Shown here: positions 8,311 through 56,336 of the stretch, piece by piece
Layout of the letters: every line of letters begins with the position of its first letter
Numbering within the stretch: position 1 is the first letter of the stretch
Assembly: GCA_053919585.1 (NCBI GenBank)
Contig: CM132796.1
DNA: 64,000 nt
Origin: Euprymna scolopes
Taxonomy: Eukaryota
Reading direction: 5' to 3' (one strand)
Made by a program: the position numbers and the translations under genes
The notes under the pieces: generated by a model
What the model was told of the DNA's origin: nothing
Seen by the model: the letters and a program-made list of their open reading frames with translations, nothing else
Database searches by the model: none

Positions 8311-9786
8311 CCGAAAATTAAAACCATTTAGTTGACGATAGTCACTTGTCATTAATACAATTAAAAATCTTATTGCATTACAAAAGATAACAAGTATCAT
8401 TATTTTTCTCTTAATATTATAATCATTATTATTAGCACTCAACATATATCGGCTGGCGATAAATAACTCATCGGTATTGTGATCTGCACCCACTGTGCAT
8501 TATCTGGCGATAACTTATCCATTTGGAACCATTGCTTATTGAACATTTTAGAATATTCCATTTTAATAATAAGGGAATTCAGTATAATAATGGTTGGTGC
8601 GATTTGGAATATTCCATTGTTATGTTAAGGGATGTTCAGCATGATGACGCTCGAAGCGAATTAGCGTATTAATATATATATATATTATTATCATATAGAA
8701 TATTGTTAATATATTATTTTCATATAGAAGTATATAGTTTTGCAATCTGGTTTCCATATGTGTTCGTAGTAAATTAGATGATGTTGCTGGCAAAAGTCAT
8801 TCGTCCTCTAAATCCTCGTAGATATTTGAAGAAATATTAGAAATTGCTCGAATCAACATAGAGTGAGAGAAGCGGATGAAGAAATATATATAACTAATTG
8901 TTTCATGTTATTCCCATCAAAGTTATAAGAAATCAAGGAACCTCTTCTAATTCAACGCTTAATCTCGAGAGGTGCGTGGATATTCTTGTGTTCAATTAAA
9001 TTTCCCTTAATCTCCCAAATCTTGGGTTACTAAAGACGTGAAATAACATTGAGTTTCTTGTGCCAAATTAAGCAGTAAGCTGTGTTATAGTATTTATTCC
9101 AGTGGCCCTTTGATCTTAGCAAATTTCAGGACAAGAATTAATCTAGTCTGGTGGAGTATCCAACTTAGTACTATTACTATAATAAACATCACTTGTAGAA
9201 AATACAACTTCCTCACATATGCCAGTACTTCAAATAAGCGTGCACATCTCCGACAGTTCCTTATTTGTTGAACTGATTATCGTAGATACATCAAATGGGT
9301 GATATAAAGACATAGCAAAACCAGTACCCATGAAACACACCTGATAATCCGTCAAACTATATTTATACTTTAATCTAAAGTCGTATTATCTCTTATTGTC
9401 TTTTTTTCTGCATCTTTCCCCTTTGCATTAATCCCGAGCTATAGCGGGTTTCTCAATAAAGGGTTTAAGTCTCCGCTTGACAAACTCACAGGCTTAGTCG
9501 GGATGGAAGCCGGTTTAACCGGGATCATTACGCAGTGTATCTGTTCAACTCATTATCGACGTTTTCCTTTGTATGCTTTTCGGCGACTTCTAACGCAACA
9601 ATATGTTTCCGGCCGGTGTCGTTATTGAGCTTGATCACATGTCCATCCGTGGGACCAGTCTTTGTTTCATCTTGTTCTTAATTGTACGTAGCGTACCGGA
9701 TGTCCATACTACCGCCAATCGTCTGTAACACTAACTGTAGCACGCTTTGCTAACCTCTTAACTAATAAAAAGTAGACCATCAGGTC

Positions 9787-9998
9787 AAGATCAAATATGA
9801 TTCGGGAATCTTAGGTAGATCGACCTCCAGAGGTATTGTGATGAATGTACAGTGGGCAGGATAACCGTAGACATCTATTCCCAAACTTTTGAGTGGCCTC
9901 GTGCCTAATTCTTTGTTTAATTCTGTGATTTTTTTTGTGTGTGTGAACTTTCAGAGTAAATAAAATATATAACTCAAAGTGTAGTATCTGTTCTGATC
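9787..9998 (+). mobile_element. U2 snRNA fragment interrupted by a short retroposed insert (9796-9973)
   Basis: aagaTCAAA | 178-bp insert ending ggcctcgtgcctaatt...aataaa | TCAAAgtgtagtatctgttct. Removing the insert and one TCAAA restores AAGATCAAAGTGTAGTATCTGTTCT of U2. Confidence 0.65.
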
Positions 9999-27754: not shown

Positions 27755-28075
27755 TTAAAAAAAAACTGTGTGACATTGTTGACATCGATTTTGTGAAAGT
27801 TCTGATGACCACAAGTTGTTTAATATTTCAGGACATCTTGGATTACATGTATAGGTAAGGAATAGGTCTGGCTTTCCATATTTACAGAAAACTGCCATTG
27901 CATCTTGATACAGTTGTTGAAGATTCCTAGGACTTCCTGTAAATGAAGATGGTAGAATAACTGGTACACCAGAATCGCCATCTTCATTCCTTGCTAAATG
28001 ATCCATTAAGCCAGAATATTGAGCAGTTCTTGGTTGACTGATAACTTTTAATGAAGTTAAATAAGCAACCGTCAA
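27755..28075 (-). pseudogene. Helitron Rep-domain fragment (motif 1 region)
   Basis: VILPSSFTGSPRNLQQLYQDAMAVFCKYGKPDLFLTYTCNP. Confidence 0.92.
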
Positions 28076-28517
28076 CTTTTACATATGCAATAGACTTTTT
28101 ATTTATTTTAAATTTTATTCAATGAAGATTTGGAAATTCACAAATATTTTCTAAGTCGAATTAGTGATATAGGTTTCAATTAATGCATCACAACTTCCTG
28201 ATAATATAAATAGAACACTTTGAATTTTCTTTACAAAAGTTTTTTCCATAAAAACATTGTAAGCTGTTATAATATTCAGACTCTTGTGTATTACATGCAT
28301 AGAAAATGAAGTGTTTCTGTAAATCTTACGAAATACAGTTAAATTTTGATTTTTCGATAATCAAAATGATGTGAGGTAGGTTAAACAAACTGTACACTAC
28401 TTTTTCATCAAATTATGAATTTTAAATATAAGGAAAGCAATTTAAAAAAAATTTTTTTCCAAAATCATATTTACATCCAAGTTAATTTTTAGATTCCATA
28501 GCTGTTCCTGATTGTTT

Positions 28518-30030
28518 TCATAACACTTCACGGTAAACAATATTCTTAGTATATGTTACACCACGCTTTCTGCCCTGATTATCATCTCTATGCAGTTGCA
28601 TTACCTTAAATTTCACACTGTGCTTAGATCGAGCTCTTGAACATGCCACATACAGCTGACCATGAGAAAATACAGGTTGTTGAAGATATATACCAACCTT
28701 ATCCAAAGTTTGGACTTGTGCTTTATTGATGGTTAGTGAATATGCTAATCGTATTGCAAACTGTATCTGATGAAATGCAAACGGAACATTTGTATCACTT
28801 GGCTTTAACTTAATTCTTGGAATGATAACTGTGGAACCTCTATTAGATCCATTAATTAAAATAGCAATGATGCTGTTTTGATGACATTCTTTTATTTTCA
28901 TCCTAGTTCCATTACAAAGTCCTTGATTTATGGATAAATTTCGCAGTCGCATTACTATTGCCCCTATTTTCACATCAAGTCGGTGAGGTAACATTCCAGA
29001 TGGAGTTAATGAATTTATGTACTCGATAGGATAATTTTGAAGTTCAGCATCATCATCGGAGATGTAATCTGCACTTAAATATGTATTTATGCCTCCGGGA
29101 AGATTATTTAGAATTTCTACATTTACTGTTAAACATTCTGTATTTTTTAGAGTCATGATGATTCAATTTTCCATTTCTTGAGGGCTGCAATCAAATATTT
29201 CTGAGATTAGAGAACCATTACATACCGAATAGTCAGGAAAATCTATGGCATCTACAGGAACGTCATTAAGACTGCTCGTTAGTGTACTATTACAAAGATG
29301 AAGGAGCCATCTAGAAAACTCCTGTTCATTTATGTTAGTTCTGACGTTTTGTGTTAGTTGTAATTGACTAAAATGATGCCACAATGGGCATCTTTTAAGA
29401 CAGGTGTCTATAATAGATGTAGGTGATCCATGTGGCACTACTGGTAAAATTTGCCTGAAGTCACCTCCAAGTATGAGAAATTTTCCACCAAATATTTTAT
29501 CGTTACCCATTATATCTTGTAAACATCTATCTATAGCAAGCAGTGCATGATTAGGTATCATAGAGGCTTCGTCTATGATGAATACCTTTACCTTTCTCAA
29601 AAATGAAGCATGCTCTGATACAGGAGAAACGTTACAGACACCGGTTTCTGTCAGAGGTAAAGGTAGTTTGAATATACTGTCGAGTGTTTTCCCTGAAGTT
29701 AGTAGCATTGCAGCAATGCCACAGTGGCGGTTACAGTACTGCTGGAGGTGAAGTAATCATATAACATGTTGAATAAAAAGGTTTTTCTGATCCGGCTGGG
29801 GCATCTAAATAGAAGCAATTGTTGTGTGGGGCTTCTTTTTCAGTTGCCATGACAGCCTTGATTATAGTATTAAAGACCTCTAATTGTTCATTGTTTAACA
29901 ATTCAACATTAGGCCCGTTTGTATTTCGAGTCATATTATCCATTGGAGGATCACCTGTTGGTTCAGGTAAACCCATTGCCTGGCAAGAAGAACCATGCTC
30001 ATTAAATATTGCTTTTATCAAATGAATAAC
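28518..30030 (-). pseudogene. Helitron PIF1-family helicase domain, frameshifted and partly deleted
   Basis: LNNEQ..FYLDAPAGSEK (Walker A), IIDEASM, GGDFRQILPV, GLCNGTR, LAYSLTINKAQ.QTL, FSHGQLYVACSR, TKNIVYREVL. Confidence 0.95.
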
Positions 30031-30046
30031 TTGGGGGATATGTATA

Positions 30047-31143
30047 TACACTGGCCCCCGCCCTTTGCGGCCCGGGCGACAAGATCAAAGTGTAGTATCT
30101 GTCCGGCAGATACTACACTTAAGATAATTTGTACCAGTCAATGGAGGGGAAACCCTCTATACTGGGACAATTATTATTTTTGGTAACCAGAGTGACCCCT
30201 TTTAGGGGAGCTGGTTTTTACCTCACATTAAAAACGGCCTTGTGCCTAATTTGCTCAGTGGGGGAGCAAATAAATACCATCTGTTCCGGCAGATGCTGCA
30301 CTTAAGATAATTTGTACCAGTCAATGGAGGGGAAACCCTCTATACTGGGAACCGCCTGGGTAATACCTAGGAGGTCCACCCTCCCAGGCCTTGCCACCGG
30401 GCTTTCCGGTGGGGCAAGTTTATTGCTTGCTGCCTGAGGCGCCTCGACCGGGGAATGCCGACGGGGTTACTCAGGCAATTTTTAAAATTGCAGGAGTGCC
30501 CCTCCTTTAGGGGAGCCTGCGGGGTTCCCACTTTCCGGCCTTGTGCCACATAATGCTGATGTGGGCAGCATTTAAATAAAAACCCTCTATACTGGGACAA
30601 TTATTATTTTTGGTAACCAGAGTGCCCCCTTTTTGCCTACTTTTAGGGGAGCTGGTTTTTACCTCACATTAAAACGGCCTTGTGCCTAATTTGCTCAGTG
30701 GGGGAGCAAATAAATACCATCTGTTCCGACAGATACTGCAAGCTATGACTAGCAAAGACCAGATGTGGGGGCAACCCCACATGTCTGACCTTTAACCAGC
30801 TCCCATTTCCCACTTCTCGGGAGCTGGTCCCCCCTTTCCCTTCCCCCTCCCTTCACTCCTCACATTAAAAATTGGCCTTGTGCCTAATTTGCTCGGTGGG
30901 GGAGCAAATAAATACCATCTGTTCCGACAGATACTGCAAGCAAAGACCATATGTGGGGGTAACCCCACATATCTACCTTGGTCAATGTAGGGGCAACTCT
31001 TCATACCAACAGTTCCTATCCAACTCCCATTTCCCACCCATCGGGAGCTGGTCCCCATTTCCCTCCCCCCTCCCTCTCTCTCTCCACATTAAAAAACGGC
31101 CTTGTGCCTAATTTGCTCAGTGGAAAAGCAAATAAATACAAAC
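30047..31143 (+). mobile_element. TSD-flanked array of four GC-rich structured units joined at U2 snRNA-like sequence
   Basis: 15-bp duplication tgggggatatgtata (30032-46, 31144-58); 22-nt U2 match at 30081-30102; units 2-4 begin atctgttc (30279, 30719, 30917); all units end ggccttgtgcctaatttgctc..gcaaataaatac. Confidence 0.75.
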
Positions 31144-31429
31144 TGGGGGATATGTATAATATATCCATTAATCCACTACACTTTACCGTAAAATTCGGCT
31201 AAAACAGTTGTTGACGAATTACCTCCTTTGAATCGATATCGTCTGCTTGTGACAATTGAAGCGAAAACCTTATTAGGTATTAAATGCTAAAACATTTTAA
31301 TACAGCTGGCTAATTGGCTATAAAGTAAGTTATTCCGATCTTTGATCTAACAGTTTAATTTAAAAGAAAGAGCTTAACATTTTCTTGTATCTTTTTTTTA
31401 TATTAAGAAAAATGTAAGCATCATGCTGA

Positions 31430-32570
31430 AATAAAAATGCCATTCTTAATAAGGGGAGAGGGTTTGACTATTCTAAATCTTCACCTAAATAACCATTTAA
31501 TGAAAAAAAAAGTTTAAAATGTTCTTGTATCTTTTTTATAATTTTTGTTAAATAAGAAAAATCAATAAACTTTGATAACACTATTGTAAGAATCATGCTG
31601 AAAGCCATTCTTAATATGGGGAGGGGGTAACTATTCTGAAACTTTACCTAACAATGTAAAAAAAAAATAAGGGAAAAATATATGTATGAACAATAAATAT
31701 TTCTTCAGTTAAAAAAATTATAGTGTAAATCTTTAAATAAGGAATAAATATTTATTTAAACCATAATTATTGAAACAGTATTTTACTGCATAAAAAAACG
31801 GTTATGGGGAGAAGGGTTAACTATTTTGAACCTTCTCCTAAATAGCCATTTAATGAAAAGAAAATTTAATGGTCTTGTATTTTTTTTTTGTATAATTTGT
31901 TTTAAAATAAAAAAAATAAAAACTTTGATACCGCTATTGTAAGAATCATGCCTAAAGCCATTCTTAATATGGGGAGGGGGTTGTATCTTTTTTATAAATT
32001 TTGTTAAATGAGAAAAATCAATAAACTTTGATAACACTATTGTAAGAATCATGCTGAAAGCCATTCTTAATATGGGGAGGGGGTTAACTATTCTGAAACT
32101 TTACCTAACAATGTAAAAAAATAAGGGAAAAATATATGTATGAACAATAAATATTTCTTCAGTTAAAAAATTATAGTGTAAATCTTTAAATAAGGAATAA
32201 ATATTTATTCAAACCATAATTATTGAAACAGTATTTTACTGCATAAAAAACGGTTATGGGGAGAAGGGTTAACTATTTTGAACCTTCACCTAAATAGCGA
32301 TTTAATGAAAAAAAAATTCAATGGTCTTGTATCTTTTTTTTGTATGATTTGTTTTAAAATAATAATAATAAAAAAACTTTGATACCGCTATTGTAAGAAT
32401 CATGCTGAAAGCCATTCTTAATATGGGGAGGGGGTTAACTATTCTGAAACTTCACCTAACAATGTAATAAAAATAATGGAAAAAATATATGTATGAACAA
32501 TAAATATTTCTTCAGTTAAATAAAATATACTGAAAATCTTTAAATAGGAAATAAATATTTCTTTAAATAA
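31430..32570. repeat. Internal tandem/direct repeats of the Helitron (about 350-450 bp period)
   Basis: aagaatcatgc..aaagccattcttaatatggggagggg recurs near 31589, 31941, 32044 and 32395. Confidence 0.85.
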
Positions 32571-56158: not shown

Positions 56159-56336
56159 GGGCGTTTGCTCAGTTGGTAGAGTGCTTGCCTTGCATGCAAG
56201 AGGCTCGGGTTTCGAATCCTGAGTTCGGATGTGTCTAACTGATGAGCCCAAATGAGGGCGAAACTCGAGTCTTGGACTTCCGGTTCTTTGACTGTCATGG
56301 CTCTTGTGAGCTGCGACGTTGTTTGGCTGTGGAATT

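What the first reader, a model, noticed from the sequence alone, without database searches (positions are those of the whole stretch)
30047..31143. Tandem array of structured RNA-like units punctuated by the U2 snRNA branch-point sequence and its antisense
Seen: a 1.1-kb GC-rich insert with a 15-bp TSD and terminal AATAAA. It opens with 22 nt of U2 (AAGATCAAAGTGTAGTATCTGT), folded back at once by a 14-nt antisense copy (cagatactacactt). Each later unit restarts at U2-like ATCTGTTC plus a degenerate antisense arm and ends with the same hairpin-AATAAA tail. Unit interiors differ in sequence but keep hairpins, including GNRA loops (gaggg-GAAA-ccctc, atgtgggg-GCAA-ccccacat, atgtgggg-GTAA-ccccacat) and ccagctccc/gggagctgg. 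Established: the GTAGT|ATCTG region is where U2-specific retrotransposons (Keno, Utopia) insert; site-specific elements build tandem arrays; U-snRNA-derived SINEs are rare. Inference: an apparently uncharacterised non-autonomous, U2-linked retroelement family that carries or regenerates its own target and an anti-U2 arm, with the array retroposed as a block into a Helitron. This is the best candidate for a novel system in the window.
Basis: partly seen in the sequence, partly recalled or inferred. Interest (0 to 1): 0.85.

Follow-up and report, generated by a model that had tools for sequence, protein, structure and literature searches.

The report
U2-headed SINE stack, grown in place
The 1.1-kb insert is a pile of short non-coding retroposons that carry a piece of U2 spliceosomal RNA at their front end; that piece is the landing site of U2-gene-specific LINEs, so later copies landed inside the first one and built the array on the spot.

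Summary
Window 30047-31143 is a 1,097-bp insert between perfect 15-bp target-site duplications (TSDs). It starts with a leader holding an exact 22-nt copy of this genome's own U2 snRNA (nt 23-44). A 14-nt perfect antisense arm follows.

The insert holds four SINE-like units: A, A carrying a nested 229-bp SINE, D and E. Each ends in the same tail. After each internal tail comes TCTGTTC, which is the published Keno/Utopia junction in U2.

The family is very large. I counted about 30,500 U2-leader heads and about 46,500 unit-to-unit junctions in the 5.9-Gb, mollusc-like genome.

One part is refuted for this locus. The array did not arrive as a block. A paralogous Helitron copy on another chromosome has the same TSD, leader and 3'-terminal E unit (92% identical) but quite different units in between. 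The founder was therefore leader+E, and A, A[nested] and D landed later in its leader.

The exact partner LINE, the source of transcription and the role of the anti-U2 arm remain open.

This scan had already met the family on other DNA of this genome (s1-275095, s1-247296, s1-279852), with similar readings.

Verdict: a new variant of a known kind (Keno-type targeting plus SINEU-like heads).

The parts
30032..30046 (+). left copy of the 15-bp target-site duplication (host Helitron sequence)
   Evidence: family D9, 15/15 identical to 31144-31158. The same duplication flanks the array at the paralogous locus L077.
30047..30080 (+). GC-rich 5' extension of the founder's leader. It replaces U2 stem-loop I.
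   Evidence: The same leader variant (..CGGGCGAC then AAGATC) has 1,191 genome copies. It is 85% identical to the leader at paralogue L077 and is also seen in L015.
30081..30102 (+). exact copy of U2 snRNA nt 23-44, including the branch-point-recognition GTAGTA. This is the pseudo-target.
   Evidence: 22/22 to the genome's own U2
30103..30109 (+). spacer CCGGCAG. Together with the preceding TCTGT it is a degenerate U2 nt 40-53 (inference).
   Evidence: the commonest spacer is CTGTTCCGGCAG (196 of 301), and intermediates towards U2 TCTGTTCTTATCAG exist
30107..30120 (+). anti-U2 arm, complementary to U2 nt 30-43 in the leader. It is the start of unit A.
   Evidence: pair I1, 14/14. Family variants keep A or G opposite U35 and U38.
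30110..30279 (+). unit A (first copy): body plus tail. The tail is 30236-30279.
   Evidence: Other genome copies are 97-99% identical.
30280..30292 (+). inter-unit spacer TCTGTTCCGGCAG (U2 nt 40-46 plus a degenerate remainder). It has the look of a target-site duplication.
30293..30719 (+). unit A (second copy), interrupted by the nested SINE
   Evidence: Halves 30293-30350 and 30580-30719 align to unit A.
30351..30579 (+). nested 229-bp SINE with its own tail of the same architecture. An 18-bp TSD lies at 30333-30350 and 30580-30597.
   Evidence: (family D4). The RNA reads and contigs also show the uninterrupted form (joint 30332 to 30580).
30720..30732 (+). inter-unit spacer TCTGTTCCGACAG
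   Evidence: family D1
30733..30917 (+). unit D: body with a GCAA-loop hairpin and the CCAGCTCCC/GGGAGCTGG stem, then the tail
30918..30930 (+). inter-unit spacer TCTGTTCCGACAG
30931..31143 (+). unit E, the founder. It is the oldest unit and is shared by descent with the paralogous locus.
   Evidence: 92.0% identical to the last unit of the L077 array, against 72-79% to the other units there. The tail variant is the same one as in L015.
31144..31158 (+). right copy of the 15-bp target-site duplication
9784..9990 (+). a second member of the system in the window: a short tailed element inserted in a U2 fragment (CAAGATCAAA | element | TCAAAGTGTAGTATCTGTTC) with a 5-bp duplication
   Evidence: the tail fold is
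27755..29708 (-). host: degenerate Helitron fragments (PIF1 helicase, Pif1 2B domain, Helitron_like_N)

Best explanation
The insert is a stack of SINE-like, non-coding retroposons. They are mobilised in trans by APE-type LINEs whose natural target is the 5' part of the U2 snRNA gene.

Anatomy of an element. Each element RNA has four parts:
- a U2-derived leader, up to about nt 6-47 of U2;
- a short arm complementary to U2 nt 30-43;
- a family-specific structured body;
- a 3' tail, made of a GGCCTTGTGCC mini-hairpin, a second stem-loop and an A-rich end. This tail architecture is shared with the LINEs.

History of this locus. A founder (leader plus unit E) inserted off-target into a Helitron copy by target-primed reverse transcription, making the 15-bp TSD. 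Its leader is a copy of the LINE landing site, so it was hit again. The bottom strand was nicked at the Keno/Utopia position, before TCTGTTC. Each new copy was joined upstream through the leader. This left the leader at the 5' end, a short U2-derived spacer between units, and the founder at the 3' end. D, the A unit carrying the nested SINE, and A arrived this way, singly or as a multi-unit RNA.

What is shown: the anatomy, the family size, the LINEs in true U2 genes, and growth in place.
What is inferred: the nicking and joining steps, which LINE did it, and how the RNAs are transcribed.
For: 1. Junctions. Of 306 unit tails in 39 loci, 240 are followed by TCTGTTCC, about 12 by U2 nt 6-46 and 5 by nt 27/28-46. 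Published Utopia and Keno 3' flanks start at U2 nt 39, which is TCTGTTC (PMC4640811).

2. Family size. There are 46,549 tail-to-unit junctions and 30,487 leader-to-unit heads genome-wide. The same U2 segment occurs only 1,538 times in true-U2 context.

3. LINEs in the real U2 array. The 764-bp U2 tandem array is interrupted by two LINE families. LINE-A (L043) is flanked by U2 nt 1-47 and nt 22-199. LINE-B (L044) is flanked by U2 nt 1-47 and nt 1-199. ORF2 has Exo_endo_phos, RVT_1 and zf-RVT domains. LINE-A has many copies with 97-100% identical uninterrupted ORF2.

4. Shared tail. A 17-nt motif is identical between LINE-A and units A, D and E. All families share the two-hairpin architecture. 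The tail stems of two nested-SINE subfamilies differ by two compensatory double changes.

5. Growth in place.
- Paralogue L077 has the same TSD. Its flanks are 93-95% identical, its leader 85% and its last unit 92%. Where the window has A, A[nested] and D, it has three other units.
- L015 has the same leader variant and the same founder type but other units between them, and its own 17-bp TSD.

6. LINE-A itself lands in such leaders away from the U2 array and forms LINE-LINE tandems.

7. Solo units and arrays with TSDs of 10-19 bp occur at non-U2 sites.

8. The family is present in polyA RNA at 100-400x against about 1x for the flanks. Reads cross the unit junctions.
Against: - No LINE with exactly the A/D/E tail end (hairpin plus AAATAAATACCA) was found. 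The two LINEs sampled in U2 genes join at U2 nt 21|22 and 0|1, not at 39|40.
- No A, D or E unit was found in a genuine U2 gene, so the source of leader-bearing transcripts is unknown.
- There is no age gradient along arrays for families A and D.
- The trimer A-A[nested]-D recurs, once as an 842-bp tandem period. Block copying or unequal exchange therefore also contributes.
- Tx1-clade membership of the LINEs was not tested.
Confidence: 0.8

Rival explanations
1. Block retroposition only. Arrays are assembled at a few master loci, transcribed through several units and copied whole, so the window's four units arrived together.
For: - One TSD pair flanks the whole array.
- The trimer A-A[nested]-D recurs in many loci and as an 842-bp tandem period on C45.
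- There is no age gradient along arrays.
- RNA reads cross unit junctions.
Against: - Paralogue L077 shares the TSD, leader and last unit but none of the three units between them.
- L015 has the same founder and leader with different inner units.
- The recurrence of the trimer in my loci is biased, because the loci were chosen by similarity to this very array. At least 11 further hits begin only in a tail, so the unit in front of the nested copy there is not A.
Confidence: 0.1
2. End-to-end template jumping. During one reverse-transcription event the enzyme jumps from the 5' end of one unit RNA to the 3' end of another, making concatemers without any re-targeting.
For: - The junctions are uniform.
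- Such jumps are known for R2 reverse transcriptase in vitro (my own knowledge).
- The SINEU paper invokes template switching for head addition (PMC4494074).
Against: - It needs unit RNAs that begin at U2 nt 40, whereas array heads begin at about nt 5-13.
- It cannot explain the different inner units at a shared insertion site.
- The junction coincides with a known endonuclease site in U2.
Confidence: 0.05
3. Satellite-type amplification. The units are a tandem repeat expanded by unequal crossing-over or replication slippage, and the U2 resemblance is incidental.
For: - Long arrays with regular periods exist: 281 bp on C1 and 842 bp on C45.
- D units within one array are slightly more alike than between arrays, 0.064 against 0.077, p = 0.02.
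Against: - Tens of thousands of dispersed short arrays and solo units have TSDs.
- The units carry LINE-type tails.
- The U2 match is exact, is 22 nt or longer, and is repeated about 30,000 times.
Confidence: 0.03
4. A functional structured non-coding RNA locus, for example a U2 decoy or regulator, rather than a mobile element.
For: - Predicted structure is strong.
- The arm is complementary to the U2 branch-point-recognition region.
- The family is present in polyA RNA.
Against: - The locus sits inside a dead Helitron between TSDs, and the family has tens of thousands of copies.
- No Rfam family matches at E up to 10.
- Inner units are not conserved between paralogues.
Confidence: 0.02

Closest known systems
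Keno (APE-type, Tx1-clade LINEs specific for U2 snRNA genes)
   Same: APE endonuclease plus RT LINEs sit in genuine U2 genes here. The dominant 3' junction of the short units is the published Keno/Utopia position, where the flank starts TCTGTTC. Keno was reported from vertebrates, lancelet and cnidarians (PMC4494074, PMC4640811).
   Different: The two LINEs sampled in the U2 array join at U2 nt 21|22 and 0|1 and leave duplications of 26 and up to 47 bp. Clade membership was not tested. The host is a mollusc-like genome. Here the bulk of the family is non-autonomous and lives outside U2 genes.
SINEU (crocodilian SINEs with U1/U2 snRNA-derived heads, mobilised by Tx1-Mar LINEs)
   Same: Short non-coding elements with a U2-derived 5' end and a LINE partner related to U2-targeting LINEs. 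Some partner LINEs also carry U2 heads. Tandem SINEU-3 copies that sandwich a TSD were explained by sequential insertion (PMC4494074).
   Different: Here the head is only the first 46 or so nt of U2, and the body is not U2-derived. The head itself is the target, whereas SINEU targets a Mariner element. Stacks reach more than 14 units. Copy number is in the tens of thousands. SINEU was stated to be absent outside crocodilians.
Utopia (restriction-like-endonuclease LINEs in U2 genes)
   Same: Same insertion position in U2. Occasional tandem insertions and arrays within U2 gene clusters (PMC4640811).
   Different: Utopia has a PD-(D/E)xK endonuclease. The LINEs here have an APE-type endonuclease.
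R2/R1-type rDNA elements co-transcribed with their target
   Same: The logic is the same: upstream target sequence on the RNA helps to form a precise 5' junction, and repeated hits on a repeated target occur (my own knowledge).
   Different: Those elements stay in rDNA. Here the target fragment travels with the element and seeds new landing sites across the genome.

Membership tests
Keno/Utopia-type U2-site-specific retrotransposition | The 3' junction lies at the conserved U2 position, so the flank begins TCTGTTC (nt 39 in standard numbering, nt 40 in this U2) | tested here: met
   All three internal junctions in the window and 240 of 306 in 39 loci. The site is taken from PMC4640811.
Keno/Utopia-type U2-site-specific retrotransposition | Copies reside in genuine U2 snRNA genes | tested here: not met
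   For units A, D and E, only 7 genome hits have the tail followed by true-U2 downstream sequence, and none of them is a real U2 gene. The feature is met for LINE-A and LINE-B in the 764-bp U2 array.
Keno (Tx1 clade) | The autonomous partner encodes an APE-type endonuclease and a reverse transcriptase | tested here: met
   Pfam Exo_endo_phos, RVT_1 and zf-RVT in the 1,145-aa ORF2. ORF1 has a CCHC knuckle.
Keno (Tx1 clade) | Phylogenetic placement of the RT within the Tx1 clade next to Keno | not tested
SINEU | The 5' head is derived from U1 or U2 snRNA | tested here: met
   22/22 match to own U2 in the window. Heads reach U2 nt 6-47 in other copies.
SINEU | Short, non-coding, high copy number, with a 3' tail shared with a LINE | tested here: met
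   Units are about 170-215 bp. There are more than 77,000 junction or head matches. The tail motif and architecture are shared with LINE-A and LINE-B. The exact partner is unresolved.
SINEU | Sequence relationship to the crocodilian SINEU-1, -2 and -3 families | not testable with these tools
   There was no access to Repbase or Dfam consensus sequences.
SINEU-3-like (internally deleted U2) | The body is also derived from U2 | tested here: not met
   Local alignment of the A, D, E and nested-SINE bodies to U2 nt 48-199 is no better than shuffles.
Pol III SINE (tRNA, 7SL or 5S head) | The head matches a tRNA, 7SL or 5S RNA carrying an internal promoter | tested here: not met
   No tRNA, 7SL or 5S Rfam match at E up to 10 on 29900-31300. 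The 17-nt 5S-like start of the nested SINE was not tested further.
Retrozyme / ribozyme-bearing tandem retroelement | A self-cleaving ribozyme in each unit | tested here: not met
   No ribozyme family matches the insert at E up to 10, apart from a chance-level 16-bit RAGATH-13 row. The window's hammerhead lies elsewhere, at 56233.

The most novel reading that the evidence does not exclude
The anti-U2 arm may be a working part of the element. The 11-14 nt at the start of every unit, and of several unrelated bodies, keep complementarity to U2 nt 30-43 just upstream of the nick site, with A or G opposite the two U's. The arm might pair with the target's top strand, with the element's own leader, or with U2 snRNA itself. 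In that way it would help to choose or license the landing site. That would be an RNA-guided component of target choice in a LINE/SINE system, or a sponge for the branch-point-recognition region of U2.
Probability: 0.12. Interest if true: 0.8.

Novelty: new variant of a known kind. Interest (0 to 1): 0.55.

Why it matters
snRNA-headed SINEs were described only in crocodilians, and Keno was reported only from vertebrates, lancelet and cnidarians. Here a mollusc-like genome holds tens of thousands of U2-headed units.

The head is also the landing site. The element therefore spreads its own target and stacks on itself, and its partner LINEs use the same pads away from the U2 genes.

The paralogous locus gives a rare natural before-and-after view of one array growing in place.

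The family also places about 30,000 extra copies of the U2 branch-point-recognition sequence, each beside a matching antisense arm, into transcribed DNA. This makes a possible effect on splicing or on target choice testable.

Tried and rejected
- U2-derived bodies. By eye, unit A looked like U2 stem-loop IIb, the Sm site and stem-loop III. Alignment against shuffles gave no support. Rejected.
- Rfam on the insert at E up to 10: no U2, tRNA, 5S or 7SL match and no credible ribozyme match.
- Standard U2 pattern without the extra A: 0 hits. The genome's U2 has the extra A.
- Empty-site search. A 44-nt pattern of left flank, one TSD copy and right flank, with up to 3 mismatches, gave 0 hits. The only paralogue found is also filled.
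- Reading frame across the removed insert. The host frame continues only 17 nt past the junction, so the test says nothing.
- Age gradient along arrays. It is flat for A and D, and negative for E on only 4 arrays. Uninformative.
- Bodies against LINE-A and LINE-B UTRs. Results are marginal at best. The nested SINE against the LINE-A 5' UTR was reached by 1 of 300 shuffles, and D against the LINE-A 3' UTR by 2 of 300. These are leads only.
- Partner LINE with the exact A/D/E tail. Not found among the LINEs in the U2 array. A pattern joining the LINE-A 3' UTR to the hairpin tail gave 0 hits.
- Read laying. The family is too repetitive for locus-specific conclusions, and no empty allele was seen.
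- Two calls to search RF00004 in the genome failed for technical reasons. Pattern searches replaced them.
- HDV-like or hammerhead processing at the 39|40 junction was considered. The local pairing is a plain hairpin and no core motifs are present. Rejected.

Full report
**1. The observation**

The stretch 30047-31143 lies between two perfect copies of TGGGGGATATGTATA, at 30032-30046 and 31144-31158. It is richer in G+C than its surroundings, 0.44-0.52 against 0.25-0.41.

At 30081-30102 it holds 22 nt that are identical to nt 23-44 of this genome's own U2 snRNA. I recovered that U2 from a 764-bp tandem gene array (L036:591-789 minus strand, Rfam U2 at 161 bits). The 'extra A' in AAGATCAAAG is native to this U2, and the standard pattern without it has no hit in the genome.

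A 14-nt perfect antisense copy follows after 5 nt.

The tail motif GGCCTTGTGCC occurs five times in the insert and six times in the window, against 0.37 expected. Every internal tail is followed by TCTGTTCCGRCAG and then ATRCTRCA.

Predicted folds are far more stable than dinucleotide shuffles: z = -6.0 for leader plus unit A, and -9.0 for its first 95 nt.

So the description is accurate, with three corrections:
- A 34-nt GC-rich leader extension precedes the U2 piece.
- Only the first junction contains the branch-point-recognition sequence.
- The five tails are four units (A, A, D, E) plus one 229-bp SINE nested in the second A, with its own 18-bp duplication.

**2. Family and genome context**

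The genome has 5.9 Gb in 925 contigs. RNA runs labelled as mollusc hold the sequence.

The whole insert finds thousands of candidates. Exact counting by pattern, allowing up to 2 mismatches, gave:

| Pattern | Matches |
|---|---|
| Tail followed by TCTGTTCCGRCAGAT | 46,549 |
| U2 segment followed directly by the unit start | 30,487 |
| Same U2 segment in true-U2 context | 1,538 |

In 39 fetched loci, 240 of 306 tails are followed by U2 nt 40-46, about 12 by nt 6-46 and 5 by nt 27/28-46.

Arrays begin, directly after host DNA, with a U2-like leader that starts around nt 5-13.

The unit bodies are not U2-derived. No Rfam family fits the insert.

**3. The partners**

The real U2 array on contig C9 is interrupted by elements of about 7.1-7.6 kb.

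- **LINE-A (L043).** It lies between U2 nt 1-47 and U2 nt 22-199, which is a 26-bp duplication of the target. It has an 880-aa ORF1 with a CCHC knuckle. Its 1,145-aa ORF2 has APE-type endonuclease, reverse transcriptase and zf-RVT domains. Many copies across the chromosomes have 97-100% identical uninterrupted ORF2.
- **LINE-B (L044).** It is 74% identical to LINE-A in nucleotides. It lies between U2 nt 1-47 and a complete U2. This is either a 47-bp duplication or the loss of one repeat.

Both LINEs, units A, D and E, the nested SINE and the short element at window 9784-9990 share one tail architecture: a GGCC..GCC mini-hairpin, a second stem-loop of variable sequence and an A-rich end. Seventeen nt of the tail are identical between LINE-A and units A, D and E. 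Two subfamilies of the nested SINE differ by two compensatory double changes in the stem while keeping the loop.

The published 3' flank of both Utopia and Keno starts at U2 nt 39, that is TCTGTTC (PMC4640811). This is exactly the dominant junction here.

**4. How the array was built**

The decisive evidence is a paralogue. On contig C8 (L077) there is another copy of the host Helitron region with an array at the same site and the same duplication.

| Feature compared with the window | Identity |
|---|---|
| Flanks, 300 bp each side | 93-95% |
| Flanks, over kilobases | 88-93% |
| Duplication | one mismatch in the left copy |
| Leader | 85% |
| 3'-terminal unit | 92.0% to the window's E, including the unusual ATACAAAC end |
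| Units between leader and last unit | window has A, A[nested] and D; the paralogue has three other units, 72-79% to E |

The founder was therefore leader plus E, inserted once. The host copy then duplicated. Later elements landed in the founder's leader independently in the two copies.

L015 tells the same story. It has the same rare leader variant and the same founder subfamily with the same tail variant. It also has its own 17-bp duplication, and other units in between.

A sample of 20 loci chosen only by that leader variant (1,191 genome copies) shows solo units and arrays of 1 to more than 14 units. A crude search found duplications of 10-19 bp in 8 of the 20.

LINE-A also lands in such leaders away from the U2 array. 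A copy on C14 is preceded by an E-unit tail and a leader of U2 nt 6-47, and is followed by U2 nt 22-47 and another LINE-A. Several pairs of LINE-A copies about 7.6-7.8 kb apart fit this.

**5. Mechanism proposed**

Shown:
- a leader-bearing founder at a non-U2 site;
- later gain of units between leader and founder;
- junctions at a known endonuclease site;
- LINEs of matching tail architecture in true U2 genes.

Inferred:
- The LINE endonuclease nicks the bottom strand of the leader before TCTGTTC, and the tail of a unit RNA is reverse-transcribed from that nick.
- The second nick falls some 7-14 nt downstream, so a short U2-derived spacer is duplicated. The spacer CTGTTCCGGCAG looks like a decayed U2 nt 40-53, and intermediates exist.
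- The upstream join uses homology between the incoming RNA's own leader and the resident leader. This would explain why a single leader remains at the 5' end.

Multi-unit RNAs probably also move. The trimer A-A[nested]-D recurs, once as an 842-bp tandem period, and polyA RNA reads cross the junctions. My loci were chosen by similarity to this array, however, so that recurrence cannot be quantified.

**6. What remains open**

- No LINE with the exact A/D/E tail end was found. The two LINEs in U2 genes join at other positions.
- No A, D or E unit sits in a true U2 gene, so the source of leader-bearing transcripts is unknown.
- The anti-U2 arm is present in at least five body types. It varies only between A and G opposite U35 and U38 of the leader, which keeps an RNA hairpin of about -16 to -22 kcal/mol. 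Transitions are the commonest changes anyway, so this is weak evidence of selection. Its function is not established.

**7. Comparison and verdict**

The system works like Keno/Utopia targeting combined with SINEU-like heads (PMC4494074). It differs in four respects:
- the head is only the first 46 or so nt of U2;
- the head is itself the target;
- stacks are long and very numerous;
- the host is a mollusc-like genome.

Searches of the paper library found no description of it. Repbase and Dfam could not be consulted.

This scan has already noted the family on other pieces of this genome, with similar readings. My analysis reached the same reading independently. It adds the LINEs in the true U2 array and the paralogue that shows growth in place.

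Noticed in passing
window 56167-56277: A type I hammerhead ribozyme (45 bits; gathering score 34) lies directly after a tRNA-like segment (33.5 bits). It is a different SINE or retrozyme-like element, already noted by the scan as s1-292385.
   Followed up: no
window 9784-9990: A short tailed element is inserted in a U2 fragment after GATCAAA, with a 5-bp duplication (TCAAA). The tail is of the LINE-A type (AT-rich second hairpin). This is a different junction position from the main family.
   Followed up: partly
window 31525-32436: A 452-bp unit is repeated twice at 95% identity, with an inner 103-bp repeat, in the AT-rich sequence just right of the insert. The paralogue L077 also has this region.
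   Followed up: no
window 30351-30579: The nested SINE starts with 17 nt that recall the 3' part of 5S rRNA (from memory, not tested). Its body shares two collinear short modules with the LINE-A 5' UTR, GCCACCGGGCTTT and CCCCTCCTTTRGGGGAG. The alignment score was reached by only 1 of 300 shuffles.
   Followed up: partly
L002, L003, L005, L007, L013, L016, L022-L024, L026, L029: Many arrays end in a different unit, 'F', whose tail is GACCCTGGTGTCTAA .. GTAAATAGGTACA. Where a duplication is visible it is only 8-10 bp, against 15-19 bp for arrays ending in A/D/E-type tails. This hints at a second LINE machinery.
   Followed up: partly
L053:1520-2900 and L054: A non-coding element of about 1.4 kb starts like unit A (U2 nt 40-53 with one change, then ATGCTGCACTT and a GAAA-loop hairpin). 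It contains a further internal U2 leader. It often sits at the 3' end of arrays.
   Followed up: no
G000:C1:30311069-30313871 and G000:C45:69138727-69142455: Long regular arrays occur: a 281-bp period in which every unit keeps its leader, and an 842-bp period of the trimer A-A[nested]-D. These are probably secondary tandem amplification.
   Followed up: no
window 30250-30272 and all A/D/E tails: The tail hairpin GCTCAGTGGGGGAGC resembles a tRNA D-arm with a box-A-like GCTCAGTGG. No box B was seen downstream. This is probably coincidence.
   Followed up: no
L062, L065, L070 (5' ends): A sub-lineage of the leader carries a 47-nt GC-rich 5' extension, ACAGTCGC .. GGCGGCCC, directly after duplications of 12-19 bp. 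The U2 stem-loop I part has therefore been replaced by another hairpin in full-length elements of that lineage.
   Followed up: no
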